Source of the DNA: Vitrella brassicaformis CCMP3155
Lineage: Eukaryota; Protista; Chromerida
Reading direction: 5' to 3'
Length of the DNA: 64,000 bases
Assembly (NCBI GenBank): GCA_001179505.1
Contig: CDMY01000227.1
Location: 310,001-374,000 of the forward strand
How positions within the stretch are numbered: the stretch's first letter is position 1; every line of letters starts with the position of its first letter. Positions 1 to 29,444 of the stretch are shown here, in pieces. A model generated the notes under the pieces. That model made no database searches. It was not told where the DNA came from and was given only the letters and a program-made list of their open reading frames with translations. The translations under genes and the position numbers were made by a program.

Positions 1-481
1 GCTGCAGGGCGTGTGGGCCCCCTGTGTGTCTGTATGTCTGTGTGGTTGTTCAGCACCCCGTCTGAGCGTCCCACAGCGTCAGCGTTGCTGAGGCATCCCT
101 TTCTGCGGCAGGCAGCCATGCGACACGCGGCGAAGGCCAAACGGGACACACCTGGCCGCAGCCGGGAAAGCCAGTGAGTGGAGAGAGAGAGAGAGAGAGA
201 GAGAGGGTGTAGGCTTTAGATGTAGGTGTAGGGGACGGCTGTGTGAAGATAGCTATGTATGTGTGTGCGACAGCCATCAGGAAGTATTGATTTACTTGTC
301 TGTAAGGTGTCACCATACATACGCACTGCGGCGCACGCTTCCCCCCATGACTCGGCTCAGTCAAATCTCACCGATAAGGTTTGTCTTCATATCGTGAAGA
401 AGTGCAGGCAGGACTTGTTTGCTTGGTCGGTCACTCGGGGATGTGGGATCAAAGACAGGAAATATAAAATGTAGGCAGCTA

Positions 482-1758
482 TCAGCAAAGACCTTTACCC
501 CCACAGCGCTCAGCACCACAATCAACAAGCCAGGCAGCCCCATGTAACATCAACAGGCAGGCGTTGATGTCGTTGAGGTCGGTATTGTTGTAGGTGGCAC
601 ACCGGTCTCGAGGTCTTGCCGACTGGCTGTGTCGCCAGCCAGTGGTTTGCGGGAAAATGGAAAGATAAGTCGCCGACAAATACAAAAATGTCGGCAGCGA
701 TTTGAAAACACCTGCGATAGGGAAAATGTTCACACACATGTGTCTTCGCATTTCTCGGCAAGTGACGTAGTTCCGTATTGTGTACCTGCAAGGCAATCAA
801 GCGCTCGCTCAAGCTGCCCGCTGCGACTTGGAGGCGTGCAGCGCCCAAAGCAAACCCAGCAAAGCGAAGCAAACCGAAGCAAACCTGCGTCTTGCTTGTA
901 TCGATGCAAGACAAATCAATGCAAGCAAAGCAAAGCAAGGCAAAGCAAGGCCCAAGCCAAAGGTGACGAGGGAGAGGAGACAAGCAAAGCAAAGCAAAGC
1001 AAAGCCAAGCCACCAGGTCCGTGTGCTGTGGTCGAACCCCCCGACACGCTCGCCCAGCCCACCGTCGAGAGATGACATAAGGGGCGCAGACCTCGGCGCA
1101 CACGAGCTCGGCGAAGATGATACACGCGATGTAGAGTCCCCTACACACGAACCTGTTCCCTGGTAACGCCAGGAGACAGGCAGAGCAAAAGATCACCCTC
1201 AGATGCCGCCAGACGCTGCTTTTGTAGCATCTCCAGCAGAGCGGCGGGAGGGGGATCTATGCTGCTGTGCCGCGGGGGAAGGAAATAGAGCTGTCTCGGC
1301 TGAGGATGTGCAGCTCCCCGTCCGCCGCATCTCGCCACAGAAACCAGACCAGATGCGGTCGTTGACGATCAGCTGGTCCGACAAATATGGAATGTAGGCA
1401 GCCATCAAAGCCGGCCAACTGTCTCCGGCGAGCTGCGGAAAAGGAATCCCTCGACCGCCTCGCGCTAAATGCCAGTCGAGTTCTGCTGCAGGTTGAGCTG
1501 TGTCTCTCTGCTGCCGTTGTGGCCATTGTGGCCGTTCTGCGTCCTTCCATTCCCGTTGTGGACGCCCTGCATGTTGGGGCTGCCGTGCTTCAGGCCAGCC
1601 TCAGGTGTCTTCTTCCTGCATTGGGTTGCCATCTGCAGACGTCGATCTCTCGGCTTGCTAGAAACCGGGGCCCCTGACGCTTGCAGAGAGTAGATTACGA
1701 AGCCCCCGAGACCAATCACTGTACCGCCCCACCAGATTCTCAATGAAGATGGCCACAC
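482..1758 (-). CDS. Possible multi-exon hypothetical membrane protein (exon chain not resolved; may extend beyond these bounds)
   Basis: GC3-rich hydrophobic segments such as GLYIACIIFAELVCAEVCAPYVIS (~1070-1140) and GVFKSLPTFLYLSATYLSIFP (~650-710) are flanked by AG/GT sites and microsatellite introns. No recognisable family motif. Confidence 0.3.
845..1012. repeat. Degenerate (GCAAA)n pentanucleotide microsatellite, probably intronic
   Basis: Visible runs such as aagcaaagcaaagcaaggcaaagcaagg and caagcaaagcaaagcaaagcaaagcc. Confidence 0.85.
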
Positions 1759-2438
1759 CTGTGATCAGCTGCCAAAAGCACTATATGTGCGATACACAGG
1801 ACCAGTGCAGATCCGCTGCATCGTCGCTCAGGGCGCGAGAAGCCACATCGACACCAGCGCCGACTCTTTGCTTCACCCCCAGCCCGTCCTCGAGCCCCAC
1901 CCCAGCCGCAGCCGCAGCGGTGGAAGCAACTGCCTCTCTGAATCGCCTGAAGAGGAGAGAAGGGCATGCCCACGCCCATCACCGCCACTTCTGCGGACAC
2001 CTTGCCATTGAGAACAGGGAGTATGACACGCAGGAAGAAGTGCTCACCTGACGGAGACAAAGGTATGGCACGTGGTATGGCGCACTGCCCAGCTGCCAGG
2101 CGGACGACAGGCACTCGCCAGCCGCTCGCAGAAGGCGGGTCGCCACCTGCCACGGAGGCTGGTCAAGGAAGTGGCGGGCGGCTCCGGACAAAAGGGGAGG
2201 CATGGGAGGGGGCGGGGCGGACCACGGAAACCAACAGCCAGCTCAAACGAAAAAGAAACAGAGGCGGTGTGGCTGACCAAAGTCTGGAGAGCTGCGAACG
2301 GCCGAAAATTGCAAAGAACGAGTGAAGAAGGGAGAGACGGAAAGACCCGTCTCGGCGAGAATTCTCGAGCGCTTTGAGCTTGCGGCATTCCTCTTTTGTT
2401 GGGCGAGCATCACACACCTCAACAAAGGGAGCATAGTT

Positions 2439-3685
2439 ATGGCGCACAAGAAAGATTCGTCATCCGTTGCCACGTCAGCTGGTCCGGCGGCGGAGAAGGG
2501 TCTGAAGATCATCGGAGCTGGTAAGCAGGAACGTGACAGCAGTCGCACAACACCAGCATCCGTGCGTGTGCATGCGTGTAGGTTACGGGCGCACCGGGTG
2601 GGTGGATGCACAGGCAGATGATATACTCCATCATCTCTTTTAGCAGTGGGTGATTCGCTTGCAGGACCTTCTCTCTCAAGAATGCTCTGGAGCAGCTGGG
2701 CTACCCGTGTTACCACATGGCGGAGCTATTCGCCAACCCTGCAAGGATGCCCGTGTGGCGGGAGATCACGAGGAAGAACGGCAAGGGCGTTGACTGGGAC
2801 GCCGTCTTCGACGGCTTCACAGCAACAACCGACTGGCCCGCTGCGCCCTTCTTCGATGAGCTCTTCCAGGCATACCCCGACGCAAAGGTGAGCACTCACA
2901 TGGAGAGAGATGCCTGGCTGGCTGGTCTCATTTCAGGTCTGTTGTGTCTGCCTTGCGTGTGAGTGTGCGTGCAGGTGGTTTTGACGGTGAGAGACCCCTC
3001 CAAGTGGTACCAAAGCATCCGACAGTACGCCACTCATGCAGATGCACGCACGCCACTCAACACACACGAGACAAGGGCTCTCTGAGGACATCTGCCGGCC
3101 GGCCTCTCTCTCTGGTTGTGCAGGACGGTCATCAGTTTCCGGAAGCACCGCAAGTCGCCCATCTACCGACTGGGTCTGCGCCTCTGCCCCATCTTTGTTT
3201 TGCGCGAGTTCCAGCGGATGTGGCACGAGCTGCAGCTGGCCCGCCCATTCACCGACGCATTTGACTTCGACGAGATGACCGAGGAGGGCACCGTGGCCAT
3301 GTTCAACCAGTGGACACAGCACGTCAAGGAGACTGTCCCGCCACAACAGCTGCTCGTGTACGAGGTGGGCAAGGATCTCACCCCGAGGCACGCTCACATG
3401 TCCTCACTGCGCGTGCCTGTGTGTGTGTGTGTGTGTGTGTGTGTCGATCAGGTGAGGGACGGTTGGGGCCCGTTGTGTGCTTTCCTAGGCCATTCCATCC
3501 CCTCCACACCCTTTCCTAACCTGAATGACGTCGAGACGTGGAAGCGAAGGGCGCCGAGTGGGGAGAGACTGCTGTATGGCATTGGCTATACTACGGTGGG
3601 GCTTGCTGCACTCGCTTCTGTGGGGGTCGCCTGGGCTCTGCTCACTGCTGTAGGAGCAGCTGCTCGAGCAAAGACACGGGCGTAG
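2439..3685 (+). CDS. P-loop sulfotransferase-family protein (Sulfotransfer_4-like) with C-terminal hydrophobic anchor, spliced
   Basis: Spliced product: KIIGAG|YGRTG|TFSLKNALEQLGYPCYHM, TTDWPAAPFFDELFQAYPDAKV|VLTVRDPSKWYQS, PPQQLLVYEV|RDGWGPLCAFLG..PFPNLND. These are the typical family motifs. Canonical GT-AG introns. Confidence 0.85.
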
Positions 3686-4880
3686 AGAGAAGACAGCTGT
3701 GTGTACGTGTGTGTGTAGTGCTTTGTCATGTCATGTACATTATGGGCAGGTAGGTGATCTAAATGGATGGATGGGATGGATGGTGTGTGTGTTCCTGCGG
3801 TTTATGCTTTCAGTGACGCAGGTCACTGCGTGAACGTCAGGATGTGCCGGCCAGTCGAAAAGACAGACACAGTCTTGCTTGGGGGCTTCTTGGTTGGTTG
3901 GTTGGTTGGGCGGGCGGGTGGGTGGGTGGCCGGACAGACAGCAAGAAGAGAGGAAAGAGACACGTCTGTTGTTTTTCGGCCGGTGCTGCATCGGGCGTTC
4001 TCTTTTCGGCGGGCTCGTGTGTGCTCACCGCCTCTCAGGAGAGATGCGTCGATTCTCGGTCTCTTTGCTGTACTTCGGCCGGTGCAGCGGTGCGTGTCCC
4101 TAAGTAGCGGATGGATGGATGGATGGACGGGCGAGATCGCGGCCATGTGTGCGCAGACAATGTACGTTCCTTTGTGCTGACGAGAAACTGGTTGCACGGT
4201 CAGACATGTCTGCCCTTTGGGCGACAAACACATGTGTGACAGACACACACACAGATACACAAACGTGAACGTGCACATCAACAGATAGAGTTGCCGTACG
4301 TAAGCAACTCACTCCCTTCTGCTGTCTCTGTCACTCACTTGCCTCAGGAATCGCTTTCGTCTGACCTGTGTGGAGCACTAGCCACGCCAGCCAGACCAAG
4401 CACAGGCTGACGCACATCCACAGATAAAAGCGGCAGCTCGACCGCTCGTACACTCATCAAGGCTGACTGACCCCCATTTCGCTGTTTCGGTCCGCTGAGT
4501 CTGTCACTAACTTGTCACCAGAGTCTGCGTCCCATGGCGCGAGTGGAGAATTTGCCACATCGACCACGACACGCACGCCACGGTGACAAGCCAGAGACAG
4601 AGCCAGGTGCCAGGAGACGGGGACGTGTACAGACCAGACCGACTGTGTCGGCAATGCAGCGTATACAGAGATCGAAAAAGCGGATCAACCATCGTCTGCC
4701 CGGCTGGCTAGTGGTGTACGTATATAGTATGTGCACTCTCGCCTCTCTCGTCTCTCCTTGAAAGTGCACTGCTCTCTCAGACAGACACACACACGACACC
4801 ACTGGCACAAACCAAAAAGACCCAATCCAATGCCAAACCACACCAACAATCGCCCCACCTCCCCCCCGCGGGGAAAAACA

Positions 4881-7800
4881 CTAGGGCGTGAACACCGTCC
4901 TGGGCACATATGGCTCGAACGGCTCGAGCGATGGCGGCGGTCCCTCTGCCGGGAACGTCTTGACCCAGTCGTTGAATTTGGCGCGGCAGTCCTTGATCTC
5001 GGGGTCATCCATGTCGGGGGCCGGGGCCGTCGGCGCGCCGTCCGCCTTGCCTTTCAAGCTCTCGGTTGGGAGTTTCGAGGCCTGGGTATGGAACTGCCAC
5101 GCCCAGATGTCCGCATAGTAGACCACCGACTGCATGCGGGGCAGCCGGATCGACTCGCACTCGCGCAGGATCGTGGGCACCACGTCGGCCGGCAACTCCA
5201 CATGGCTGTGGCCATTCACATCGGCAGACATTCACACAGGATGAGAACGAAAATGGTGACCGGTTGAATCACATTTCCTCCTCCTCTGTCCGGTCAATCT
5301 TGCCTGGCTTGTGGGTGGTGCCGTTCGTCATGTCGCCGTTGCTCACGGTGGTCGTGTTCGGTGCCTGAATGTTTGGCACGTGTTTCTCGAACATGTCGAT
5401 GAGCACGCTGACGTCCTCAAAGGTCATGTTGGCCCCCTGGCCGGGGCCAGGATAGGGCGCATGGGCGGCGTCGCCGATCATGATAACGCGGCCCTGTGTG
5501 TCAACCGACGAACATACACAGTCAGGCAGGCCATCGAGCATCTTCTCATTGCAGGCCACTGTTACCTTGGGTGTGGTGATGGTGGATGTGGCGGCCCTGT
5601 CGTAGATGCACCGCTCGTAGATCTTCTCCTCCGGTGTGGCCCCCACCATGCAAATGATCTCCGACATGTCGGGCTGCGTCTCACCGGCCGGTATCTGCGG
5701 CTTCCCACCCTCTTGGCCGATAGGCACTGCCAGGTCAGTGCCGTCACGCAGGCCACGAAGTAGGTGCTCTTTGAGACCTTGGCGCCCCGCAACGGCGCGG
5801 TGACCGGCCTTGGACAACTCAGGCACTCGGATCTGAACACAAAAGCACAGTCAATCGAATGTGCGGGTCAATGAGAATCTATTGACTGTGTAAGATTCGA
5901 GGGCTTTGTGTCCATATGTGCAAGTGCGTGGGTCACCCACCTGCCAGAAGACGTGTGTGCCGACATCAATGATATACGCCAAGACGTTCGGGCAGTCTGA
6001 TGTGAGGGCGACTGTGCCGCGCTCTGTGTAGGGCAGCGGCACGCCCTCGGACTCGGCGTAGCGCGCGATGTCCTGCAACGCAACAAGTACCAGATTATGA
6101 ATATACACTTGTAGAGAGGCGTCGATGGCCGGCTCCTACTTCTTTCTTGACGAGTGCGTTCCAGTTGAGGAAGCCATGGTACTTGGGCGGGTCCTCGATC
6201 ATCAGCGCCGCAGCAGCCGACCCCTGGCCGTCTTTCGTGACCTGCATTACGCCGTCGCGCTTCTCACGATGCCGCGATAAGATCTGGGGCCGGAGGGCCG
6301 AGAAAGCGCCGTCGACAGCCACGATCATCTTGGCCCTGGAAGATGAGTGCACTCACAGGGAAGGATGGCCACGGCTGGGGTGATTCCGTGTAATGGTCGG
6401 TCACACTGACCTGACTTGCTCGTTCCTGCCCTCGAACACGAGTGTCGCGCCGGTGTCGTCCTCAGTGAAGTCGCGACCGCCGCAGCTGCAGTGGATGACC
6501 TCGTCGGGCACGTGGGAGGCGAAGATGTTCTGTGCCTTGGTCCAGCGGATGGTCACCTCGCCGTTGCCCTTCTTATCGACGCGGATTGTCTTGACCTGGA
6601 TGGATGAGCACCACGACATACAGCAGGGATAGGTATGTGGGCGCATATGAAAGTATGTGTACCTCCTTGCCCAGCATGCGTTGATGTAGGGCTACGGTCG
6701 GGTCCATGACGCCAGAGGCCAACATGGTATCTGCAATGTCGCACTTCACCCGCCTCACTGCCGATATTCCGTTCGTGAAGGCCATGAAAATGCCCTGCAC
6801 ACACGGCACAATCAACAGTGGAAAGGGTCCTTCCCATCTCCCTCTCTCTCTCTGTCTGTCTCTGGCTGACCTGCGATGCATTTCTCAGAGCAGGGGCACG
6901 CTCAAACACATGGGCGTCGATGCCACGACATCTGACGTACACACACGTACACACAGAGACCATCATCACACAGGAAGTAGTAGATATCTCTCCCCTCTCC
7001 CGGCCACACTCACTCACCTCAGCCCGGCGCACAGCAGCAGGCCGCCAAGCCCACCTCCGACAATGGCCACGTCCACATGCGTCGGCAGTGGCTTTGCCGC
7101 AGCCAACAGGGGCCGCGACACGCCCATCGTCGATGGCCGCAGCACCATGTGCTCCAACGTCGTCCCACACGCCTGCACCAAACAACCACACCGTGCACGG
7201 ACACCATCTTTCCCAGCCCGCCCACCTACCTGTTGTATCTTCTCGCATGTGGCTGGTGTGGACAGTTCAAAATGGCCCGTGAGGCCTCCATCGATCCTGG
7301 CGCTGCGGACGGCCTCTTGGATGGCGATGAAGACGGATGTGCTGCCGAGGAGGGGCGGCTCGCCCACCGCCTTGCTGCTCGCGAAGCCCTGGGGATGGGA
7401 GGTCTTCTCCAACAGACGCACGCGCATGTCACTGAAGCACAGAGAGAGAGAGAGAGAGAGAGGTGCACAGTGTTTGTTAGTATGTTGTGTGGTGGTTGGG
7501 GGGACGGGCGTACGTTGGGATATCGCCGGCGAGTGGTGGTTTGTATTCCCACGTGCCGTCGGTGAGGAGGCGGCCGGTCGACTCGTCGATGACCACCTCC
7601 TCGCTCGTGTGGAAGCCGATGCCCTGCAGTGCATGTCACAATATGCGGGACACACACCGAATGAATGCGGCACACGCAAGGCACAAGACATGTGCTCTCT
7701 CTGTGTATGACGCACCATGACCAGCGCGCCCTCAGCCTGCCCGATGTCAATCAAAGGATTCAGACTCCTTTACACACACAGCATACAAACCCCAAAGATT

Positions 7801-10800
7801 ACCACACATGGAAGTCCCCATTTCTTTCCCTCCCTTCCTCCCGCCCTCCCTCTATCCTCCCCTCCCTCTCGCGTACTTGCCGCAGTCGTAGAGCATCTCG
7901 CAGTAGTGGATGCGCCTCTCCCCTGTCAGCACGTCGATCTCCACCTCACTCACGGCCGCGCCATAGGTGTCGTAGAACTCAAAAGGCTTGCCGCTGAGGG
8001 GCTTGTACTCGCCCTGCTGCTGCAGGCTCACCTTGGCCCCATCAGCTGCCGTGATGACCTCTCGCCACCTGTCCGCCACACTCGCGTCACCCTGCGCACA
8101 CAACACACACACACATGAAGACAGTGCGATGGTGTGAGTGACCTACGGACACACCCACCGGTTTGCAGAAGGGCATGAGTTTGTCCACGAGCTTGGTGGC
8201 CGCGTCGTGGATGGCCCAGCACATCCTCTCTGATGCGGTTGAGCCGGCCGATGGGCCGGGGTTGGGCATGAATGCCGTGTCCAGGTCGGCCATGCGCACC
8301 AGGGAGGTGGGGAGCGCCTCGCCGAACAGACCCATTCCCAGGGTCTCGCACGCCGTCTGGGAGATGGATACATACACACATCATGGGCGACAGGCTGATG
8401 GACGTGGTGTGTGTTTGTGCGCGTGTGTGTGTGTGTGTGTGTGTGTGTATTTACCTGGACGGTTTTGATGGAGAGACCCTGGCCCATCTCCACCCCCTCA
8501 TGATGCAACACAACGCTGCCATCCTGCATCCAGGCACCATAGACACACAGACACACACACGAGGCATGCAGACACACCAGTGTCCTCTGATATACGCACC
8601 TTGTAGACGTTGATGAGTGCACTGCTGAAACTGAGCGGCCGAGGGTACCGCAACGTCGTCATCGCCAGGCCCCTCTTGCGCCACCGGTTGGCGGTGTTGA
8701 ACCGCTCCACCTCACTCTTCCGCCCCTCCCACCCACTGGTGGCCTTGAGCTCCTCCCATATCCTCGGCAACACATACGGCTCAGTCAGGGTGCGTGGTGG
8801 GGGCATCGGGCGGCCCATCATCGACACGGACGGGGGGCACATGTCTGTTGCCGTGGGCGAGTAGAAGTTGGTCTCGCGGACGGCTGATGGGTCCAGGTCG
8901 AGATGGTGAGCGATGCGCTGCAGCACCGACTCGATGAAGGTGGACGCCTCGGGGCCTGAATGGCGAACCAACACGTGGGAATGTGTGTTGGGGGGGGTGT
9001 GTGTGTGTGGTGGGGGTACCTCCTGGGCCTCTGACGGGAACTCTGAGAGGGAGGTTGGCCGTGTACATCTTGGTGGCGACGTGCAGGTGAGGGATGCTGT
9101 AGGTCTGGTCCACTGTCTCGGTGGCCTCCTTGCACCCGATGATGGCGCCGCCCTGCGTGACGCCACACACACACACACACAAACAGAAGGAATCGCACAA
9201 TCGGCCTACGCACACATGATATCGGCATATCAGCGCACCGGCACGGCCCCCGTGATGGCGTGTATGGTGGCCCTGAGAGCGTGGATGCGCCCCTTTTCGT
9301 CCACGGCAACAGCATACTCAAACTCCATCTCCTCACTGACACCAAGACATAGCCATCGACACAGACAATGATCGGCATCGACCCCAGTGCCTCTACGCCG
9401 TACCGTCCTCCGGTCATGGCGCAGTCCTGGTTCCGGTTGAGAACGAGCCGCACCGGGCGGTTGGTGGCCTTGGCGGCCACGGCCGCGTTGACGGCGTGGG
9501 GGATGGACAAAAAGGCCTTGCCGCCAAATCCGCCACCCAATCGACTGAAAGTCACACAGACAAGGGAATGGACAATGGTTGGATGGTGTGTGTGTGAGGG
9601 ACTTTCGCTCACCGAATCCTGATGTTGACCTTGTTGTGGGGGACATTGAGAGCACTAGCCACACTCGCATGTGTGTACTGCGGCCCCTGTGTGCTGGACC
9701 ACACTGTCATCGTCCCGTCCTCGTCAGGCACCGCATACGCCGCCTGTGGCTCCATGTAGAAGTGCAGCTGGCTCCCGCACTCAACCACACCTCGCAGCAC
9801 GTGCAGACCACCCTCTTTCGACCCCTCTGCCGCCAGCAGGTCGTCGAACTGCGAGACGTCGCCCTTCTTGGCCTCCATGGGGATGGGTGTGAGGGTGCTG
9901 GCTGCCCTGGCCTGGGCGAGTGTGACGACAGGCGGCTTGACGTCGTCCCAGGTGAGCTTGACGAGCTTGATGGCCTGCTCTGCCGCTGCGGACGTGGTGC
10001 CGAGCGCCAAGGCGGCCGGCTGCCCGAAGTACTTGGACCTGCCGCCGATGGGCACCATCACCTCCATCAGAGGCTTCCCTGCGACACACAGAAACACATG
10101 CATTGCATCCCTTCACCTGATGCCTCTTGGTGCTGTGTTGCGTACCGAATAAGGAGAAAATGTTGGTCCCAGGGATGTCAGCAGCGGTCACCACCTTGAC
10201 GACCCCTTCCACCCTCTCGGCCGCACTGCCGTCCACCGCCACCAGCCTGGCGTTGCCCTGGTCGCTCCCGACGTACACGCCGTACAGCGCCCCCTTGCCC
10301 ACATGGACGTCCCCGGTATACCTCGCCTCGCCGCTCGACACAAGATGCGCGTCAGGCTTGGGCAGTGGCTGCCACAGCACCGCGCCACCCTTGCCATCCG
10401 CCCTCCTTGTCTTCTCGCGTCCGTCTCTCTCCAGCTGTTCGGTCGACTCATCGACGGGAAGCACTTTGCCCATGGCGGGGTGGGATGACGGGACGGGCGG
10501 GGTGCTGAGGGACAGCTGTGGCTCGGCCGCCGAGAGGATGGATTGTGCGGGGGCGGTGGGGTGGGCGTCGGTGTAGGTGCCGCGGGCCTCCTCGGCCGCC
10601 AGCAGCACCAGGAACTTGTAGAGGTAGCTGCCGATGAGGGACCGGCGGAACGACTGACGGTCGAGGGAAGGGTCGATCGATATCTGAGCAGGACACACAC
10701 CACGACGGCTCTCTGTATCCACCCACACACATCCACACCACACCTTTTGTCGGCTGCTCTCTTACCTCTGATGTGATGAGCTTGACGGCCTCTCTGACGG

Positions 10801-12429
10801 TCTCGTCGGTGAGGCCATACGTCTTGAGGAAGCTCTCTGTCTTGACGGCCCGCTGCGGCACCGCCCCCACCGCCCCCACCACCAGGCGCACCTCACACGG
10901 ATGACGCACGACAGGGTCCAGCTCCATCCAGAAGGCCGCATTGGCGAAGGCGTGGGCGTACCGCGGCCGCATTGACGTCCTGTACGAGCGGAAGACGGAT
11001 TGTGTGGCGATTTCGTCCGACGGCAGGGGGATAGAGATGGACGTCACGATGAAGGCGTGCGAGGGGGGAGTGGTCCAGAGGGACTGCAGGGGGAGGGTGT
11101 GAGAGGTCCCACTGGATGGGTCGATGTACTCGATGGCCGCGTCCCATGCCGTCAGCAGGGGGGCGAGGTCGGAGTGGAAGCCCTTGTGGTGCACCAGCAT
11201 CAGGTTGCCCGCTACGCTGCCCATGTTGCGGACCTGCTTGCTCGCCACGGCATGCAGGTGCGATATGAGGGGCGTCAGGTGCGATTCGGCAAAGTGCCGC
11301 CCATCGCCTCGCGCCAAATCCTCCAGCGCCTTGACGAATGTCGACACGCTCACTCCGCCGCCGATGCGTATCTCACCCCCACCGTCCCTCTTGTGCGCCA
11401 CCGACACGTCCATCAGCAACGCAACGCGGTCGAGCGCAATCACCGTCGCCGCCGTGTCGTTTGTCCGCCAGCAGGATGACGGCGGGCCGTCCTTGTAGAT
11501 GCCGACAGACGTGTTGCCGAACACCAGACGGACGTTGGCCGCGCCGTCCTTCTTGGCCTGCTGCCATATGGTGATGGCCTTATCGAGTGTCGCCGGGCTG
11601 TGCCAGGTGACGCCCATGCTGCTGCTGGTGAATGATGAGGACGGCAGGGGGCCGGTGAGTGCGGGCGGGAGAGCGGGGGTGGGCCATTGGGATGGGGGAC
11701 AGGTGGTGAGGTCCTCGATGTCTGCGAGGCCGATCGATGACAGGTGGGGCGGCGCATCCTTGCAGAAACTGCGGCAAACGTCCCACAGAGGGCGGTAGCC
11801 TACATGCAGATGGAGAAACCATCGAACGATTCACGCACCCATTCCGTCCACTCACCGGTGCATCGGCATATGTTGCCATCGATCTTGCCCGCCATCTTGT
11901 CGCTTGTGAGCTCCCCATCCTCCCCAGTCAGGGCATCGTACAGGCTCACGACGAAGCCAGGGGTGCAGTAGCCACACTGCGACCCTCCCAGTGCCTGCAC
12001 ACGGCGGTGCAGCACCGCCGGCCCATCGCCTCGCTGCTTGTCATTCTGCAGTCCATGTGCCGTCGTGATGGCGCACCCCTGGACGGAGGGGAGGGGCTTG
12101 AGGCATGAGAGGGCCGTGTGGCGGTGGGTCTGAGAGGTGGCGGGATCGAGGCGCTCCACCAGGACGGTGCATGCTCCGCAGCCTGGGAGAAGAACACAGC
12201 ATACTCATGTGTGGGCGCTTGGCATGCTTGTCTCCAGGCGTGTGAGTGCAGTGCTCCGTGTACCGCCCTCAGCGCATCCGATCTTGACATTGGTGACATC
12301 GAGTGTGTCCCGGAGGTAGGCCGCCAGCGACACCGAGGGGTCCACTTCATGTGTCGGGATGCGCACCTCTCTGCTGTCCACAGTGAAGACAAGATCACCT
12401 CCTGCCGATGGCGCACTGGAGCCGGGCAT
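4881..12429 (-). CDS. Aldehyde oxidase/xanthine dehydrogenase-family molybdo-flavoenzyme fused in frame to a C-terminal class A FAD-dependent monooxygenase (copy 1, apparently complete)
   Basis: 2Fe-2S motifs KIGCAEGG|CGACTV and SQCGYCTPG..GNICRCTG. FAD domain LVFGNTSVG and QVRNMGSVAGN..SDLAPLL. Moco domains RLGGGFGGK, VRGPGGPEA, HHEGVEMGQGLSIK, LNPLIDIGQAEGA, GTWEYKPP, SSKAVGEPPL, PATCEKIQQ|ACG. Then with no stop: VDVAIVGGGLGG, FERAP, VAVDGAFSALR, GRVIMIGDAAHAPYPGPGQGANMTFED, ILRECESIRLPR, and TAG at 4881-4883. Confidence 0.92.
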
Positions 12430-12550
12430 GGTCGATGATGATTCACAAGACAGATGCTGTCACTGTGTTCCCCCCCTCTGCGCTCCTGGTGCGCTCGAAA
12501 TTCGTTCCTCTGTTTTCACGCTAAGCTCGCAGGGCGAGCTAAGAGGTGCC

Positions 12551-14469
12551 ATGTCCTTACTTCCCTTTACTGGTGCCATGTCCTTGCTGAAGTCCCTTTC
12601 CTTCCGAACATCATGCTCACCGCAGTACAGAGCTGTTCATCCACTCCAGTGCTGCCCTGTAAGCACTAATCATTGCAATGGACACCATGAGTCAATGACA
12701 TGCAGCTCCCCCTGCCTGCAGGCGTTGCGACCGTCCGTCCCTGCCCCGCGGGCAGCAGGTCGAAAGTGGAGCTGGGCCTCCCTGCTGCGGTGGCAGCCGA
12801 GAGAAGAGGACCGTCACGACGATAGAGACGTCCAGGTGGTGCAAGAGGCGAAGGTACAGTACGAGAGTGTTCCGTCCCTTGCGTGTCAGCAAATCTCTCT
12901 TGCTTGCCTCAGGAGCACAGTGCGGTCAGTTGCTTAGCTTTCAGCCCGTTGCTGCCCGTGGAGGAAGATCCGCAAGAACCGCCGCACTATCTCGTTGCTT
13001 GCGGCTGCCAGGATGGCCACGTCACTCTGTACAAGTGTGTGTGCAGCGAGTTTGACCTGGCGTACCTCGGTGCATCGACACCGCTGGAAGCATACGCCAA
13101 GCCGCACTCCCCCGTCGCCACCCTTCACAGGATATTGTTCGGCCATTTGGCGGCAATCACGTCTTTGGTGTTTCTGACCGAGACTGACCCGCCCGTGCGG
13201 CTGTATACCACGTCCATCGAGGGCGTGGCCTTCCTTTGGGACGTGGAGAGAGGTGAGACACGAAGAATGCACACCCACTCATTCACTGCCTGTTGTCCGG
13301 CTCGTTCAGGCATCCCGCTGCGGCATTGGCGAGCGGGGCCGATAATTGGAGCAGAGCTTGTTTGTGTGGACCTCTCCTCGCCTGTGGTCGCTTTTATCAC
13401 GGCCGACGGCAACTTCCACTGCGTCGATGTCAATCGTGGAGATATGATAAACAAACTCCAATTGGGTGGTCAGCTCAGATGTCTGGCGATAGATGATGTG
13501 ACCGGCAGCTACGCATTCTGCGGTGGCCTGACGGGGAGGGTGACGGCAGTGCGAATCGCCCTCTCGCCCAAGGGGAGACACCACACCATCCGCGCAACCC
13601 TCACCAAAAGGATATCGAAGGGCTCGCTTACTTGCTTGTCTTTCGTGGGCGGCGAGGGGGAGCACTGCATCTCTCCGGGTCCCTTCCTCATTGCCAACAC
13701 GACTGACGCGTCCCTCGTCATTGTGGATTGTGTCTACCAGCCATTGGCGAGGCGGAAGGACACCACTGGCGAGAGGAGGCGCGTGTGGGTGCTGGTGGAT
13801 CTGATTGTCAGAAGGCGGCTTGAGGTACAGCTTTCCCGTCATGCTGGCTGGCTGGCTGGGCTTTGATGTCTCCTTCCTGCTGTGTGATAATGCATGCACA
13901 CATGCAGCTGGTACAGATGAGGCTGCCCATTCGTCACACGTACACGAGCTACGGTGGCACCTATGTCGTTTCGGCATCGGAAGACAAAACGGTCGGCAAC
14001 CAAACACACGGGAAGTCCACCGTGCACCCCCTTCTTTGGTGTTCAGGTGACGGTGTACTCACTCAGCCTCCACGGTGACCTGCGCTGTACCTCACTGCAG
14101 CACCACAAGAGCCCGGTTCTCTCGGTTGCCCTGTCTCCGCCATCCACGCTGCTTGTCTCGGGCGACACGTCAGGAAACCTCGCCTTCTGGAGAAGGCTGA
14201 CGTTCACACAGCAAACACAGAGCACGTGCCAGTCACAACACTCCCTCCCCACCCCCATACTGACGGGCCACTCTTTCTCTTCCCCCGAGGCGGCGTCGAC
14301 GCCCTTCAAGGGCGCATATTCGTGCACTGAGGACGAGAGTGAACATGCGGTATTTGTGATAGGTGAGGCGGAGCCAGATGATCACGAGGCAAGGCGGGAT
14401 GGGGAGGGGGGAGAGGAGGGGCAGAGACGGAGGTCGAGGGTGGAGGAGGTGGAGGATGGGTGGGTGTGA
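12551..14469 (+). CDS. WD40-repeat protein (C-terminal part loosely WDR44-like), spliced
   Basis: EHSAVSCLAFSP..LVACGCQDGHVTLY, LFGHLAAITSLVF..TSIEGVAFLWDV, YVVSASEDKTV, HHKSPVLSVALSPPSTLLVSGDTSGNLAFW. The start codon is tentative. Confidence 0.75.
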
Positions 14470-20639: not shown

Positions 20640-20939
20640 NNNNNNNNNNNNNNNNNNNNNNNNNNNNNNNNNNNNNNNNNNNNNNNNNNNNNNNNNNNNN
20701 NNNNNNNNNNNNNNNNNNNNNNNNNNNNNNNNNNNNNNNNNNNNNNNNNNNNNNNNNNNNNNNNNNNNNNNNNNNNNNNNNNNNNNNNNNNNNNNNNNNN
20801 NNNNNNNNNNNNNNNNNNNNNNNNNNNNNNNNNNNNNNNNNNNNNNNNNNNNNNNNNNNNNNNNNNNNNNNNNNNNNNNNNNNNNNNNNNNNNNNNNNNN
20901 NNNNNNNNNNNNNNNNNNNNNNNNNNNNNNNNNNNNNNN
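20640..20939. other. Assembly gap (300 N)
   Basis: Run of N. All three gaps are exactly 300 N, so the size is probably a placeholder. Confidence 0.99.
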
Positions 20940-20940
20940 G

Positions 20941-23900
20941 CCCCGACATACAGCAGGGATGGGTATGTGTGCACATATCAAAGTAAGTGTACCTCCTCCC
21001 CAGCATGCGTTGATGCATGGCTGTGGTCGGGTCCATGACGCCAGAGGCCAACATGGTATCTGCAATGTCGCTCTTCACCCGCCTCACTGCACACATTCCG
21101 TTCGTGGAGGCCGTGAACATGCCCTGCACACACGGCACAATCAACACTGGAACGGGTCCTTCCCACCTCCCTCTCTCTCTCCCTCTCTCTCTGTCTCTGG
21201 CTGACCTGCGATGCATTTCTCAGAGCAGGGGCACGCTCAAACACATGGGCGTCGATGCCACGACATCTGACACACACACATACACACAGAGACCATCATC
21301 ACACAGGAAGAAGGGTATCTCTCCCCTCTCCCGGCCACACTCACTCACCTCAGCCCGGCGCACAGCAGCAGGCCGCCAAGCCCACCTCCGACAATAGCCA
21401 CGTCCACATGGGTCGGCAGTGGCTTTGCCGCAGCCGACAGAGGCCGCGACACTCCCATCGTCGATGGCCGCAGCACCATGTGCTCCAACGTCGTCCCACA
21501 GGCCTGCACCAAACAACCACACCGTCCACGCAGGAACGCAGGCGGACACCATCTTTCCCAGCCCGCCACCTACCTGTTGTATCTTCTCGCATGTGGCTGG
21601 TGTGGAAAGTTCAAAATGGCCCGTGAGGCCTGCATCGATCTTGGCGCTGCGGACGGCCTCTTGGATGGCGATGAAGACGGATGTGCTGCCGAGGAGGGGC
21701 GGCTCGCCCACCGCCTTGCTGCTCGCGAAGCCCTGGGGATGGGAGGTCTTCTCCAACAGACGCACGCGGATGTCACTGAAGCACAGAGAGAGAGAGGTGT
21801 ACATGTTTGTTGGTGGTATGTTGTGTAGTGGTTAGTGGGGGAAGGGCGTACGTTGGGATGTCGCCGGCGAGTGGTGGTTTGTACTCCCACGTGCCGTCAG
21901 TGAGGAGGCGGCCGGTCGACTCGTCGATGACCACCTCCTCGCTCGTGTGGAAGCCAATGCCCTGTAGTGCATGTCACAACATGCCGCAACACACCGAATG
22001 AATGCGGCACAAGGCACAGGACATGTGCTCTCTCTGTGTATGACGGACGTACCATGACCAACGCGCCCTCAGCCTGCCCGATGTCAATCAAAGGATTCAG
22101 ACTCCTGTACACGCATAGCATACTCTCTCCCTCCCTCCCGCCCTCCATCCCTCCCTCTCGCATACTTGCCGCAGTCGTAGAGCATTTCGCAGTAGTGGAT
22201 CCGCCTCTCCCCGGTCAGCACGTCGATCTCCACCTCACTCACGGCCGCGCCATAGGTGTCGTAGAACTCGACCGGCTTGCCGCTCAGGGGCTTGTACTCG
22301 CCCTGCTGCTGCAGGCTCACCCTGGCCCCATCAGCTGCTGTGATGACCTCTCGCCACCTGTCCGCCACACTCGCGTCACCCTGTCAAACAACATTAACAC
22401 ACATGAAGACAGTGCGATGGTGTCAGTGACGTAAGGACACACCCACCGGTCTGCAGAAGGGCATGAGTTTGTCCACGAGCTTGGTGGCTGCGTCGTGGAT
22501 GGCCCAGCACATCCTTTCTGATGCGGTTGAGCCGGCCGATGGGCCGGGGTTGGGCATGAATGCCGTGTCTAGGTCGGCCATGCGCACCAGGGAGGTGGGG
22601 AGCGTCTCGCCGCACAGACCCATTCCCAGGGTCTCGCACGCGGTCTGTGAGATGGATACACACCACGGGCGACAGATTGATGGACGTGTTGTGTGTGTGT
22701 GTGTGTCTTTACCTGGACGGTTTTGATGGAGAGGCCCTGGCCCATCTCCACCCCCTCATGATGCAACACAACGCTGCCGTCCTGCATCCAGGCACCATAG
22801 ACACACAGACACACACGCGAGGCATGCAGACACACCAGTGTCCTCTGATATATGCACCTTGTAGACGTTGATGAGTGCAGTGCTGAAACTGAGCGGCCGG
22901 GGGTACCGCAACGTCGTCATCGCCAGGCCCCTCTTGCGCCACCGGTTGGCGGCGTTGAACCGCTCCACCTCACTCTTCCGCCCCTCCCACCCACTGGTGG
23001 CCTTGAGCTCCTCCCATATCCTCGGCAACACATACGGCTCAGTCAGGGTGCGTGGCGCGGGCATCGGGCGGCCCATCATCGAAACGGACGGGGGGCACAT
23101 GTCTGTTGCCGTGGGCGAGTAGAAGTTGGTCTCGCGGACGGCTGATGGGTCCAGGTCGAGATGGTGAGCGATGCGCTGCAGCACCGACTCGATGAAGGTG
23201 GACGCCTCGGGCCCTGAATGACGAACGAACACGTGGGAATGTGTGTGTTGGGGCGTGTGTGTGGGTGGGTGGTGGCGGTTACCTCCTGGGCCTCTGACGG
23301 GAACTCTGAGAGGGAGGTTGGCCGTGTACATCTTGGTGGCGACGTGCAGGTGAGGGATGCTGTAGGTCTGGTCCACTGTCTCGGTCGCCTCCTTGCACCC
23401 GATGATGGCGCCGCCCTGCGTTACGCCACACACACAAACAGAAGGAATCGTACAATCGGCCTACGCATGCTATCGGCATATCAGTGCACCGGCACGGCCC
23501 CCGTGATGGCGTGTATGGTGGCCTTGAGAGCGTGGATGCGCCCCTTTTCGTCCACGGCAACAGCATACTCAAACTCCATCTCCTCACTGACACCAAGACA
23601 CAGACATCGACACACACAACGATCGGCATCGACATCAGTGCCTCTACCGCCGGGCGTGGTGATAGTTTACGCACCGTCCTCCGGTCATGGCGCAGTCCTG
23701 GTTCCGATTGAGAACGAGCCGCACCGGGCGGTTGGTGGCCTTGGCGGCCACGGCCGCGTTGACGGCGTGGGGGATGGACAAAAAGGCCTTGCCGCCAAAA
23801 GCGCCACCCAGACGACTGACAAACACACAGACAAGGGGATGGACAATGGTTGGATGGGGTGTGTGTGTGTGTGTGAGGGACTTTCGCTCACCGAATCTTG

Positions 23901-26689
23901 ATGTTGACCTTGTTGTGAGGGACATTGAGAGCATTAGCCACGCCCGCGTGTGTGAACTGCGGCCCCTGTGTGCTGGACCACACTGTCATCGTCCCGTCCT
24001 CGTCAGGCACCGCATACGCCGCCTGTGGCTCCATGTAGAAGTGCAGCTGGCTCCCGCACTCAACTACACCACGCAGCACGTGCAGACCACCCTCTTTCGA
24101 CCCCTCTGCCGCCAGCAGGTCGTCGAACTGCGAGACGTCGCCCTTCTTGGCCTCCATGGGGATGGGTGTGAGGGTGCTTGCTGCCTTGGCCTGGGCGAGT
24201 GTGACGACAGGCGGCTTGACGTCGTCCCAGGTGAGCTTGACGAGCTTGGTGGCCTGCTCTGCTGCTGCGGGCGCGGTGCCGAGCACCACGGCGGCCGGCT
24301 GTCCGAAATACTTGGACCTTCCACCGATGGGCACCATAACCTCGATCAGAGGCTTCCCTGCGACACACAAAAACACATGCATCCCTTCACCTAATGCGTT
24401 TTGGTGCGTTTTGGTGCTGTGTTGCGTACCGAATAAGCAGAAGGTGTTGGTCCCAGGAATGTCAGCAGCGGTCACCACCTTGACGACCCCTTCCACCCTC
24501 TCGGCCACACTGCCGTCCACGGCCACCAGCCTGGCGTTGCCCTGGTCGCTCCCGACGTACACGCCGTACAGCGCTTTCTTGCCCACACCGACGTCGCCGG
24601 TATACCTCGCCTCACCGCTCGACACCAGATGCGCGTCAGGCTTGGGCAGTGGCTGCCACAGCACCGCGCCACACTTGCCATCCGCCTTCTTTGTCTTCTC
24701 GCGTCCGTCTCTCTCCAGCTGTTCGGTCGACTCATCGACGGGAAGTACTTTGCCCATGGCGGGGTGCGATGACGGGATGGGTGGGGTGGTGAGGGACAGC
24801 TGTGGCTCGGCCGCCGAGAGGATGGACTGTGCGGGTGCGGTGGGGTGGGCGTCGGTGTAGGTGCCGCGGGCCTCCTCGGCCGCCAGCAGCACCAGGAACT
24901 TGTAAAGGTAGCTGCCGATGAGGGACTGGCGGAACGAGTGACGGTCGAGGGAAGGGTCGATCGATATCTGAGCAGGACACACACCACGACGGCTCTGTAT
25001 CCACACACATCCACACCTTTTGTCGTCTGCTTTCTTACCTCTGATGTGATGAGCTTGACGGCCTCTCTGACGGTCTCGTCGGTGAGGCCATACGTCTTGA
25101 GGAAGCTCTCTGTTTTGACGGCCCGCTGCGGCACCGCCCCCACCGCCCCCACCACCAGCCGCACCTCACACGGATGACGCACGACAGGGTCCAGCTCCAT
25201 CCAGAAGGCCGCATTGGCGAAGGCGTGGGCGTACCGCGGCCGCATTGACGTCCTGTACGAGCGGAAGAGGGATTGTGTGGCGATTTCGTCTGACGGCAGG
25301 GGGATAGAGATGGACGGCACGATGAAGGGGTGGGAGGGGGGAGTGGTCCAGAGGGACTGCAGGGGGAGGGTGTGAGAAGTCCCACTGGATGGGTCGATGT
25401 ACTCGATGGCCGCCTCCCATGCCGTCAGCAGGGGGGCGAGGTCGGAGTGGAAGCCTTTGTGGTGCACCAGCATCAGGTTGCCCGCCACGCTGCCCATGTT
25501 GCGGACCTGCTTGCTCGCCACGGCATGCAGGTGCGAGATGAGGGGCGTCAGGTGCGACTCGGCAAAGTGCCGCCCATCGCCTCGCGCCAAATCCTCCAGC
25601 GCCTTGACGAGCGTCGACACGCTCACCCCGCCGCCGGTGCGTATCTCGCCCCCACCGTCCCTCTTGTGCGCCACCGACACGTCCATCAGCGACGCAACGC
25701 GGTCGAGCGCAATCACCGTCGCCACCGTGTCGTTTGTCCGCCAGCAGGATGACGGCGGGCCGTCCTTATAGATGCCGACAGACGTGTTGCCGAACACCAG
25801 ACGGACGTTGGCCGCGCCGTCCTTCTTGGCCTGTTGCCATATGGTGATGGCCTCATCGAGTGTCGCCGGGCTGTGCCAGGTGACGCCCATGCTGCTGGTG
25901 AATAATGAGGACGGCAGGGGGCCGGTGAGTGCGGGTGGGAGAGCGGGGGTCGGCCATTGGTGGGGAGAGGTGAGGTCCTCGATGTCTGACAAGCCGATCG
26001 ACGACAGGTGGGGCGGCGCGTCCTTGCAGAAACTGCGGCAGACGTCCCACAGAGGGCGGTAGCCTACATGCAGATGGAGAAACCATCGAACGATTGACGC
26101 ACCCATTCCGTCCACTCACCGGTGCATCGGCATATGTTGCCATCGATCTTGCCCGCCAACTTGTCGCTTGTGAGCTCCCCATCCTCCCCAGTCAGGGCAT
26201 CGTACAGGCTCACGACGAACCCAGGGGTGCAGTAGCCACACTGCGACCCTCCCAGTGCCTGCACGCGGCGGTGCAGCACCGCCGGGCCATCGCCTCGCTG
26301 CCCGTCATTCTGCAGGCCATGTGCCGTCGTGATGGCGCACCCCTGGACGGAGGGGAGGGGCTTGAGGCATGAGAGGGCCGTGTGGCGGTGGGTCTGAGAG
26401 GTGGCGGGATCGAGGCGCTCCACCAGGACGGTGCATGCTCCGCAGCCTGGCAAGGAGAGAACACAGCATATTCATGCGTATGTGCCTGGCATGCCTGTCT
26501 GCAGGCGTGTGAGTGCTCCGTACCGCCCTCAGCGCATCCGATCTTGACATTTGTGACATCAAGTGTGTCCCGCAGGTAGGCCGCCAGCGACACCGAGGGG
26601 TCCACTTCATGTGTCGGGATACGCACCTCTCTGCTGTCCACAGTGAAGACAAGATCACCTCCTGCCGATGGCGCACTGGAGCCGGGCAT
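20941..26689 (-). CDS. Second paralog of the aldehyde oxidase-flavin monooxygenase fusion; monooxygenase part cut off by the gap and carrying an apparent 1-nt deletion
   Basis: Same exon/intron structure and motifs as 4881-12429 (MPGSSAPSAGGDLVF start, RLGGAFGGK, SSKAVGEPPL, VDVAIVGGGLGG). Exons are highly similar with scattered substitutions; introns are more diverged. Confidence 0.88.
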
Positions 26690-27310
26690 GGTCGATGATG
26701 ATTCACAAGACAGATGCTATCTCTGTTTTCACACTAAGCTCGCCAACTAGCCTCAAAGAATCCATCGCCTTCGAGTGCGGCAGCGAAGAATGGTGAGTGC
26801 TTGACTAACAGGTCCTGCACACGCACACAGGTCCAGCAGAGGGAGAGAGCAGCACATGTCCACCATGCAATTCCGTTATGCACCAGCGTTCGTGGTGCCA
26901 CTCGCTCTTTTTTCTTACCTTCTTCTCGTAGAATGTTTGTTTTGCCTCTGCTGTTCCAACGACTATCCTCCAGCGACGCCTCTCCCATCCACCGCACTTT
27001 TTTGTGACCGTCTGCGGCCCGTGTGTTGTCTGTGCACGTCGGATAAATGCTGAGATCTCCGATTGTTGCGCTACTTTTCGGTCTGCTCGCATCAGATAGC
27101 GGCGTAACAATGGCAACGAACGAACGAACGGCAAGAAGAGATCCTCACTCTCAAGCTCGCACTGGACGTCCGGACGGCGCTTTTTGGTTTCTTGGCGCGG
27201 GGGCTCGCACTGGATGTGCAGCAACGCTTTGTTGGTGCCTTTTTGCGCGGTACAACAGGGACTGCGTCAGCAGACGGCAGACAGCAGAGATCTGTCATCA
27301 ATCTGCCCAT

Positions 27311-29408: not shown

Positions 29409-29444
<36 letters not shown>

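What the first reader, a model, noticed from the sequence alone, without database searches (positions are those of the whole stretch)
4881..12429. Aldehyde-oxidase-type molybdoenzyme fused in frame to a complete class A flavin monooxygenase
Seen: after the normal end of the Moco domain (SSKAVGEPPL..PATCEKIQQ|ACGTTLEHM) there is no stop codon. A ~20-aa linker (RPSTMGVSRPLLAAAKPLPTH) leads straight into GGGLGG, then the DG motif (VAVDGAFSALR), the GD motif (IGDAAH..GQGANMTFED) and the C-terminal helix, all joined by in-phase GT-AG introns. Known: AO/XDH enzymes oxidise aldehydes or N-heterocycles, and class A monooxygenases (salicylate hydroxylase, NicC, HpxO type) hydroxylate or decarboxylate activated aromatic acids and heterocycles. 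Separate enzyme pairs of this kind act in sequence in bacterial nicotinate and purine catabolism. Inference: a ~1,900-aa two-step enzyme with Moco, 2x[2Fe-2S] and 2xFAD that converts, for example, an aromatic aldehyde to its acid and then a hydroxylated product, possibly with substrate channelling or internal redox coupling. I know of no described protein with this architecture, but could not search.
Basis: partly seen in the sequence, partly recalled or inferred. Interest (0 to 1): 0.92.

Follow-up and report, generated by a model that had tools for sequence, protein, structure and literature searches.

The report
Aldehyde oxidase fused to flavin monooxygenase
In the alga Vitrella brassicaformis an aldehyde-oxidase-type molybdenum enzyme really is transcribed as one reading frame with a flavin monooxygenase, an unreported domain combination, but in this copy a lost splice site puts the monooxygenase's last ~105 residues out of frame.

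Summary
The core observation holds. A 24-exon minus-strand gene (ATG 12429) encodes a full XDH/aldehyde-oxidase-type enzyme. Inside one exon (7172-7018) it runs without a stop into a class A FAD monooxygenase (FMO). Spliced RNA contigs from four runs in three studies bridge the junction, and one 5,360-nt contig matches CDS nt 1-5359.

The claim of a complete monooxygenase joined by in-phase GT-AG introns fails at the last intron. Every RNA contig uses a 98-nt GC-AG intron (5303-5206) that shifts the frame. The product is 1,857 aa, ends at 5054 after a 50-aa out-of-frame tail, and lacks the conserved C-terminal helices. The cause is visible: the acceptor AG kept in a 92%-identical tandem copy (window 26689-20940) reads CG here (C5223).

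That second copy, as assembled, has a 1-nt deletion in FMO exon 17. A third, divergent paralog (P0003) keeps an intact FMO but has a gutted oxidase half. dN/dS between the tandem copies is 0.21 for the oxidase half and 0.48 for the FMO half.

The organism is Vitrella brassicaformis. I found no such fusion outside it and no paper describing it. Best reading: a genuine lineage-specific fusion, probably once a two-step oxidation enzyme, now decaying differently in each paralog. Substrate unknown; not HpxO by NCBIfam score.

The parts
5054..12429 (-). Copy 1 coding region as supported by RNA: 24 exons, 23 introns (22 GT-AG, 1 GC-AG), 1,857 aa
   Evidence: Exon model and translation. Thirteen introns are listed as joints. 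The X7 RNA contig of 5,360 nt matches CDS nt 1-5359 with a constant 1-nt offset.
7146..12429 (-). Aldehyde-oxidase/XDH-type half (aa 1-1377): 2x[2Fe-2S], FAD_binding_5, CO_deh_flav_C, a/b hammerhead, MoCoBD_1, MoCoBD_2
   Evidence: Pfam hits on exon translations. PDB alignments to human AOX1 and to bovine and rat XDH.
9406..9543 (-). Exon with RLGGGFGGKA: Ala at the position of bovine XDH Glu802
   Evidence: residue-by-residue alignment to bovine XDH chains. The table places the match at 1fo4_A 793-838.
7173..7229 (-). 57-nt GT-AG intron just before the junction exon; in frame and free of stops even if retained
   Evidence: Joint 7171/7229 in X1, X7 and X8. Sequence.
7018..7172 (-). Junction exon: oxidase C-terminal tail (ACGTTLEHM), linker of about 25 aa, FMO beta-alpha-beta start with GGGLGG (7058-7041)
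   Evidence: RNA contigs X1 record 1 and X7 record 11 cover it and both neighbouring exons.
5304..7127 (-). Class A FAD monooxygenase half, in frame (aa about 1384-1807): GXGXXG, DG motif (exon 6335-6140), GD motif (exon 5493-5304)
   Evidence: Pfam FAD_binding_3. PDB matches at the GD motif. Translation.
5206..5303 (-). Last intron as spliced in RNA: 98 nt, GC-AG, length 2 mod 3, which shifts the frame
   Evidence: It is the only joint at this place in X1, X2, X7 and X8. Frame analysis.
5222..5223 (-). Lost ancestral splice acceptor: CG here, AG in copy 2. An 82-nt intron ending here would be in phase.
   Evidence: Alignment A1 of copy 1 against copy 2 (L001).
5054..5205 (-). Out-of-frame 50-aa tail read by the mRNA frame, stop at 5056-5054
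4881..5221 (-). Former C-terminal coding frame of the FMO (helix with the conserved Arg pair, ...ESIRLPR...). The ORF is still open and G/C-rich at third positions, but it is not in frame in the mRNA.
   Evidence: The Arg pair is nearly invariant in alignment A2. dN/dS between the copies is 0.70 here.
20940..26689 (-). Copy 2: tandem duplicate, 92% identical, with the same fusion. Its 3' end is cut by a 300-N scaffold gap (20640-20939) and continues on public contig CDMY01000219.1 (L001 / P0001).
20993..21123 (-). Copy 2 FMO exon 17: 131 nt against 132 nt in copy 1 (1-nt deletion near 20998). With the conserved splice sites this causes a frameshift and premature stops.
   Evidence: Rests on the assembly only; not checked on reads.

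Best explanation
This is a genuine gene fusion, so far found only in Vitrella. A complete single-chain aldehyde-oxidase-type molybdenum hydroxylase (2x[2Fe-2S], FAD, Moco) is joined through its natural C-terminal tail and a linker of about 25 aa to a group A FAD monooxygenase (FMO). The whole is transcribed as one mRNA with one reading frame.

The fusion predates at least two duplications, because three paralogs carry it. The most likely ancestral role (inferred) is two consecutive oxygenations of one aromatic or N-heteroaromatic substrate:
- The Moco half adds an oxygen from water (aldehyde to acid, or C-H next to a ring N to C-OH).
- That activates the ring for flavin-hydroperoxide hydroxylation, possibly decarboxylative, by the FMO half.

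In the copy under study the FMO half is crippled. An A-to-C change destroyed the last splice acceptor. Splicing then moved 17 nt downstream and the last ~105 residues are replaced by 50 out-of-frame residues. This locus therefore most likely now makes a working aldehyde oxidase carrying a vestigial FMO appendage.

The other paralogs are damaged in different places. The tandem twin has an early frameshift in the FMO. P0003 has lost its Fe-S cysteines and most of its Moco domain but keeps an intact FMO.
For: Shown:
- The ORF is continuous across the junction within a single exon.
- Spliced RNA contigs bridge the junction in X1, X7 and X8. The X7 contig of 5,360 nt equals CDS nt 1-5359.
- The same junction is open in copy 2. 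The paralog P0003 is also fused and carries PF00941 plus PF01494.
- The oxidase half has all family domains, 8 Fe-S Cys and the catalytic Glu, with Ala at the Glu802 position.
- The frameshifting GC-AG intron is the only joint seen in four RNA runs.
- The acceptor is AG in copy 2 and CG in copy 1.
- The lost segment holds two Arg conserved in >=90% of relatives. In the AF2 model of the paralog's FMO (pLDDT 85.8) it forms two long helices.
- dN/dS between the copies is 0.21 for the oxidase half and 0.475 for the FMO half, Fisher p=0.002.
- tblastn finds the P0003 oxidase half missing about 460 aa of the Moco domain.

Precedent:
- In Aspergillus nicotinate catabolism an XDH paralog (HxnS) and a class A FMO (HxnX) act consecutively as separate genes (PMC9304392).
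Against: - RNA evidence is from assembled contigs only. These drop minor isoforms and cannot prove a single molecule or exclude an internal start site.
- There is no protein evidence.
- That the truncated FMO is inactive is inferred from family conservation and a model of a paralog, not measured.
- FMO exons 18-22 still show dN/dS of 0.31, so the domain was constrained until recently or still is.
- The copy 2 deletion rests on a 2015 short-read assembly.
- Substrate and pathway are unknown.
- The sequence of events (fusion, then duplication, then decay) is the simplest reading but was not tested on a tree.
Confidence: 0.7

Rival explanations
1. One reading: copy 1 is a fully functional bifunctional enzyme of about 1,900 aa. 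The C-terminal helix would be supplied by a minor in-frame isoform, or the truncated FMO would still work.
For: - All three FMO fingerprint motifs are intact.
- The old C-terminal frame is still an open 116-codon ORF.
- FMO exons 18-22 have dN/dS of 0.31.
- An in-phase alternative intron, GTGAGC at 5346 to the AG at 5197-5196, exists on paper.
Against: - No such joint appears in any of four RNA runs; only the frameshifting one does.
- The natural acceptor is mutated.
- The lost part carries near-invariant Arg residues and two core helices.
- dN/dS in the last exon is 0.70.
Confidence: 0.15
2. These are two adjacent genes whose transcripts overlap. The FMO would be translated from its own mRNA starting at the Met of MGVSRP (7127), and the apparent fusion would be an effect of contig assembly.
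For: - A Met sits 19 residues before GGGLGG, a typical N-terminus for a stand-alone FMO.
- By the tool's own caveat, contigs cannot prove single molecules.
- The public annotation lists a partial FMO-only model for copy 2, P0001.
Against: - The oxidase frame has no stop before the FMO, with or without the 57-nt intron.
- One contig of even depth runs through the junction in three runs.
- The junction frame is conserved in copy 2 and a fused protein is annotated for P0003.
- P0001 starts at a contig end, not at a Met.
Confidence: 0.1
3. The fusion is an assembly or scaffolding artefact.
For: The window is a gapped scaffold with three 300-N gaps. It contains near-duplicate copies that could be confused in assembly.
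Against: - DNA contigs from independent runs (X3, X4, X5) match copy 1 stretches on both sides of the junction (7222-7424 and 6048-6725) with few or no differences, and word depth is continuous across the junction exon.
- RNA contigs match with 0 differences.
- The junction lies inside one exon, far from any gap.
Confidence: 0.02

Closest known systems
Eukaryotic single-chain aldehyde oxidases / xanthine dehydrogenases (human AOX1 4uhw, mouse AOX3 3zyv, bovine XDH 1fo4)
   Same: - Same domain order: Fer2, Fer2_2, FAD_binding_5, CO_deh_flav_C, hammerhead, MoCoBD_1, MoCoBD_2.
- Same 8 Fe-S cysteines and the catalytic Glu in KAVGEPP.
- Ala at the Glu802 position. That AOs also lack this Glu is from my memory, not tested here.
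   Different: These enzymes end about 25 residues after the PATxEKI motif. Here the chain continues for about 480 more residues into an FMO. Electron acceptor (NAD+ or O2) and substrate are unknown.
Group A flavoprotein monooxygenases (TrlE 8rqh, HpxO 3rp6, 3-hydroxybenzoate 6-hydroxylase 4bjz, NicC 5eow/8uiq, salicylate hydroxylase 5evy, TropB, SorC)
   Same: - GXGXXG, DG and GD fingerprints.
- The paralog's FMO model superposes on these structures with TM 0.7-0.8 normalised to target length.
   Different: - Sequence identity is only 15-21%.
- Every NCBIfam equivalog scores far below its cutoff, for example HpxO 66 bits against 500.
- These are all stand-alone proteins.
- In copy 1 the C-terminal helices are out of frame.
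HxnS + HxnX of the Aspergillus nidulans nicotinate pathway; also bacterial nicotinate dehydrogenase + NicC, and XDH + HpxO
   Same: An XDH-family Moco hydroxylase and a class A FMO act on consecutive steps of one pathway. The first hydroxylation prepares the ring for the second (PMC9304392; the bacterial pairs are from general knowledge).
   Different: There the two are separate, co-regulated genes and HxnX is peroxisomal. Here they form one polypeptide. I have no evidence that the substrate is nicotinate or a purine.
Stand-alone algal FAD-binding proteins (Edaphochlamys P0002, Cyanoptyche P0061, Haematococcus P0064, Mesotaenium P0065)
   Same: Nearest sequence relatives of the FMO half outside Vitrella, at 29-39% identity.
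   Different: None carries XDH/AO domains. Their functions are uncharacterised.

Membership tests
XDH/aldehyde oxidase family (eukaryotic single-chain molybdenum hydroxylase) | Two [2Fe-2S] sites with 8 conserved cysteines | tested here: met
   - The motifs are GCAEGGCGACTV, CL at the position of the fourth Cys, QCGYCTPG and CRCTG.
- The motifs from GCGACTV onward were aligned to human AOX1 residues 48-153; the first Cys (GCAEGG) is read from the sequence.
- Pfam Fer2_2 at E = 4.8e-15.
XDH/aldehyde oxidase family (eukaryotic single-chain molybdenum hydroxylase) | FAD domain (FAD_binding_5 plus CO_deh_flav_C) | tested here: met
   E = 1.8e-21 and 1.4e-10 on exon 11797-10766.
XDH/aldehyde oxidase family (eukaryotic single-chain molybdenum hydroxylase) | a/b hammerhead plus both Moco-binding domains | tested here: met
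   On exon pieces: PF01315 at 1.1e-11, PF02738 at 1.1e-18, PF20256 at 1.6e-10.
XDH/aldehyde oxidase family (eukaryotic single-chain molybdenum hydroxylase) | Catalytic glutamate (Glu1261 in bovine numbering, recalled from general knowledge) in KAVGEPP | tested here: met
   SSKAVGEPPLL aligned to rat XDH residues 1239-1306.
Xanthine dehydrogenase proper (purine-specific) | Glu802 and Arg880 for xanthine binding | tested here: not met
   The Glu802 position is Ala. The Arg880 position could not be aligned by tool, because exon 9152-9021 gave no PDB match. By eye against the bovine sequence from memory it is not Arg.
Group A flavoprotein monooxygenase | GXGXXG, DG and GD fingerprints | tested here: met
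   GGGLGG, AVDGAFSALR and IGDAAH...GQGAN are present. Pfam FAD_binding_3 hit. GD-motif alignments to KMO and others.
Group A flavoprotein monooxygenase | C-terminal helices with the conserved Arg pair, in frame with the rest | tested here: not met
   They are encoded at 5221-4881, but every RNA contig joins 5304 to 5205, which is out of frame. The two Arg are >=90% conserved in alignment A2.
FAD-dependent urate hydroxylase HpxO | NCBIfam NF033623 equivalog score at or above 500 bits | tested here: not met
   66 bits for P0001 (copy 2) and 75 bits for P0003.
6-hydroxynicotinate 3-monooxygenase (NicC/HxnX) | Substrate-binding His and Tyr (NicC His211 and Tyr215) | not tested
   NicC is one of many equally distant structural neighbours. 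No residue-level comparison was made.

The most novel reading that the evidence does not exclude
The paralogs may still make a working two-step oxygenase together. XDH-family enzymes are dimers. P0003 keeps an intact FMO on a catalytically dead oxidase scaffold, so it could pair with the intact oxidase halves of copies 1 and 2. Alternatively, a minor in-frame isoform could exist. Either way the result would be a Moco hydroxylase physically coupled to an FMO. NAD(P)H made, or electrons taken, at the oxidase FAD would be spent by the monooxygenase on the product of the first step. The net reaction would resemble a dioxygenase, carried out by a previously undescribed enzyme architecture.
Probability: 0.12. 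Interest if true: 0.85.

Novelty: new variant of a known kind. Interest (0 to 1): 0.55.

Why it matters
A fusion of two enzymes usually marks them as partners in one pathway (the 'Rosetta stone' logic). Moco hydroxylases and class A monooxygenases are known as separate consecutive enzymes in nicotinate and purine breakdown. A natural covalent fusion would be new support for that pairing in a eukaryote. It also points to an unknown aromatic or heterocycle oxidation pathway in chromerid algae, the photosynthetic relatives of apicomplexan parasites.

The three paralogs also give a compact example of a fused gene that was duplicated and then lost different halves in different copies. For annotation, it matters that the tempting full-length reading of this copy is contradicted by its own transcripts.

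Tried and rejected
- XDH plus HpxO (xanthine to urate to 5-hydroxyisourate) was my first idea. I rejected it as a membership claim: the Glu802 position is Ala and the HpxO model scores 66 bits against a cutoff of 500.
- An in-phase GT-AG last intron (5346-5196) was considered. It is not seen in any RNA contig.
- I first suspected an assembly error or heterozygosity as the cause of the frame problem. It was rejected because DNA and RNA contigs match the window exactly there. The 'other letters' seen in DNA runs come from copy 2.
- Searches for the fusion elsewhere found only Vitrella P0003:
  - exhaustive HMMER with the FMO exon;
  - word-indexed searches restricted to long proteins with P0003 and P0002;
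  - the ESM Atlas;
  - Pfam on all long hits.
- The window's own annotated protein was not recovered, either as a 277-880 aa or as a 705-2240 aa entry. I therefore cannot say how the public annotation models copy 1.
- The Arg880 position could not be aligned by tool.
- Four literature searches for the architecture found nothing relevant.
- The search of earlier findings gave nothing.
- The spliced 1,857-aa protein could not be handed to the search, fold or family tools because it has no reference. Exon pieces and paralog ids were used instead.
Full report
**What is there**

The region holds a minus-strand, intron-rich eukaryotic gene. Exon translations give every domain of a single-chain xanthine-dehydrogenase/aldehyde-oxidase enzyme, in order: Fer2_2, FAD_binding_5, CO_deh_flav_C, the a/b hammerhead, MoCoBD_1 and MoCoBD_2. 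Downstream lies a FAD_binding_3 domain of the class A monooxygenase type.

On the minus strand the exon 7431-7230 ends with ...PATCEKIQQ. A 57-nt GT-AG intron follows at 7229-7173. The next exon (7172-7018) reads ACGTTLEHM, then a linker, then VDVAIVGGGLGG, with no stop codon. Even the intron is in frame and free of stops.

**Transcripts**

Six of the nine public runs listed were laid on the region. X1, X2, X7 and X8 give spliced contigs, so they are RNA. X3, X4 and X5 cover the introns, so they are DNA.

- X1 record 1 (3,887 nt) and X7 record 11 (5,360 nt) each run through the junction exon with the 57-nt intron removed, at even depth.
- I built a 24-exon model. The record coordinates of the X7 contig match CDS positions 3903 and 5359 of that model with a constant offset of 1.
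- One assembled RNA contig therefore covers the CDS from the start codon to the GD-motif exon.
- Thirteen introns are listed directly as joints. Four lie in masked microsatellites but fit the record coordinates. Six upstream introns are inferred from sequence and from the matching total length.
- Contigs cannot prove single molecules. However, the oxidase frame has no stop, so a separate oxidase mRNA would be a non-stop message.

**The flaw in this copy**

At the last intron all four RNA runs show one joint only, 5304 to 5205. This is a 98-nt GC-AG intron.

- Its length is 2 mod 3, whereas joining the two conserved coding frames needs 1 mod 3.
- The mRNA frame therefore reads 50 out-of-frame residues and stops at 5056-5054.
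- The conserved C-terminal frame (5221-4881) is G/C-rich at third positions and still open, but it is not translated.
- Aligning copy 1 with its twin shows why. The twin has TGCAG|AT, an acceptor giving an in-phase 82-nt intron. Copy 1 has TGCCG at 5223-5222, so splicing falls to the next AG, 17 nt downstream.
- The GC donor is shared by both copies.
- The lost segment includes two Arg that are at least 90% conserved among 19 relatives.
- In an AlphaFold model of the paralog's FMO (pLDDT 85.8, pTM 0.88) this segment forms two long helices after the GD-motif helix.
- I infer, but have not shown, that the FMO half of copy 1 is inactive.

**Paralogs and organism**

An exhaustive HMMER search with the FMO exon gave two proteins of Vitrella brassicaformis CCMP3155, P0001 and P0003.

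- A self-comparison shows a tandem second copy. Window 20941-26730 is 92% identical to 6611-12470.
- The 3' end of copy 2 is cut by a 300-N scaffold gap.
- It continues on public contig CDMY01000219.1, whose first 618 nt equal window 21557-20940. That contig carries P0001.
- All 23 splice sites map onto copy 2, and its junction frame is open.
- Exon 17 of copy 2 is 1 nt shorter, which shifts the frame early in the FMO. The public model P0001 avoids this by predicting a 73-nt intron inside the exon. This deletion rests on the assembly alone.
- P0003 (1,281 aa, contig CDMY01000603.1) is a divergent fused paralog, 43% identical over the FMO stretches matched.
  - Its FMO is complete.
  - Its N-terminal part lacks the eight Fe-S cysteines.
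  - By tblastn it has lost about 460 residues of the Moco domain plus more. It keeps FAD_binding_5.
- The fusion therefore predates these duplications, and each paralog is damaged in a different place.
- Between copies 1 and 2, dN/dS is 0.21 for the oxidase half and 0.475 for the FMO half (0.70 in the last exon). Nonsynonymous/synonymous counts are 56/84 against 59/38, Fisher p=0.002.

**What kind of enzymes**

Oxidase half:
- The Fe-S motifs align to human AOX1, which is slightly the best PDB hit.
- RLGGGFGGKA aligns to bovine XDH residues 793-838, with Ala at the Glu802 position.
- KAVGEPP keeps the catalytic Glu.
- The enzyme looks catalytically competent but not xanthine-specific.
- The Arg880 position could not be aligned by tool.
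- XDH chains end about 25 residues after the PATxEKI motif. The 'linker' is therefore simply the oxidase tail plus a normal FMO N-terminus.

FMO half:
- Its structural neighbours are TrlE, CtdE, SorC, HpxO, 3-hydroxybenzoate 6-hydroxylase, NicC, TropB and salicylate hydroxylase, all about equally distant.
- All NCBIfam equivalogs fall far below their cutoffs.
- Its nearest sequence relatives outside Vitrella are stand-alone proteins of green algae, a streptophyte alga (Mesotaenium) and a glaucophyte.
- The substrate cannot be named.

**Mechanism (inferred)**

Moco hydroxylases add oxygen from water at an electron-poor carbon. Class A FMOs need an already activated ring, either phenolic or a hydroxy-heterocycle. 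Pairs of this kind act consecutively in bacterial nicotinate and purine catabolism. In Aspergillus they do so as the separate genes hxnS and hxnX (PMC9304392). The ancestral fusion most plausibly coupled two such steps. Redox coupling through NAD(P)H is possible but untested.

**Novelty**

I found no AO-FMO fusion outside Vitrella and no paper describing one. The searches have limited reach for distant eukaryotic relatives.

I rate this a new variant of known kinds. The architecture is real and unreported, which is moderately interesting. That is tempered by evidence that this copy, and perhaps every copy, no longer carries both activities.

Noticed in passing
window 20640-20939, 51222-51521, 63107-63406: Three scaffold gaps of exactly 300 N. 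The first cuts the 3' end of copy 2. Public contig CDMY01000219.1 overlaps the gap edge by 618 identical bases, then continues with the rest of copy 2 and a CobN/Mg-chelatase gene. The scaffold join at this gap may therefore be wrong.
   Followed up: partly
window 5303-5206 and the matching intron of copy 2 (L001): A GC-AG intron with a strong AG|GCAAGA donor is conserved in both tandem copies. All 22 other introns of the gene are GT-AG and are 56-109 nt long.
   Followed up: partly
window 29409-30693 versus L001:2486-3666: A stretch of about 1.2 kb downstream of copy 2 on the public contig recurs in the window at 80-87% identity. It is probably a dispersed repeat or another duplicated segment.
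   Followed up: no
window 8390-8450, 7440-7470, 6830-6870: (CA)n and (CT)n/(GA)n microsatellites sit inside introns of the gene. The read tool masks them, which hides the two introns 7513-7432 and 6870-6795 from its joint list.
   Followed up: partly
window 59112-60155 (+), 48310-49212 (+), 12883-13866 (+): Other genes in the window: a P-type cation ATPase N-terminal part, a PrmA-like methyltransferase, and a weak WD40-like match below Pfam's cutoff immediately upstream of copy 1. None has an evident link to aromatic or purine catabolism.
   Followed up: no
P0002 (Edaphochlamys debaryana, 1,183 aa): The closest non-Vitrella relative of the FMO half is annotated as two to three tandem FMO units in one protein. 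This could be a real internal duplication or merged tandem genes.
   Followed up: no
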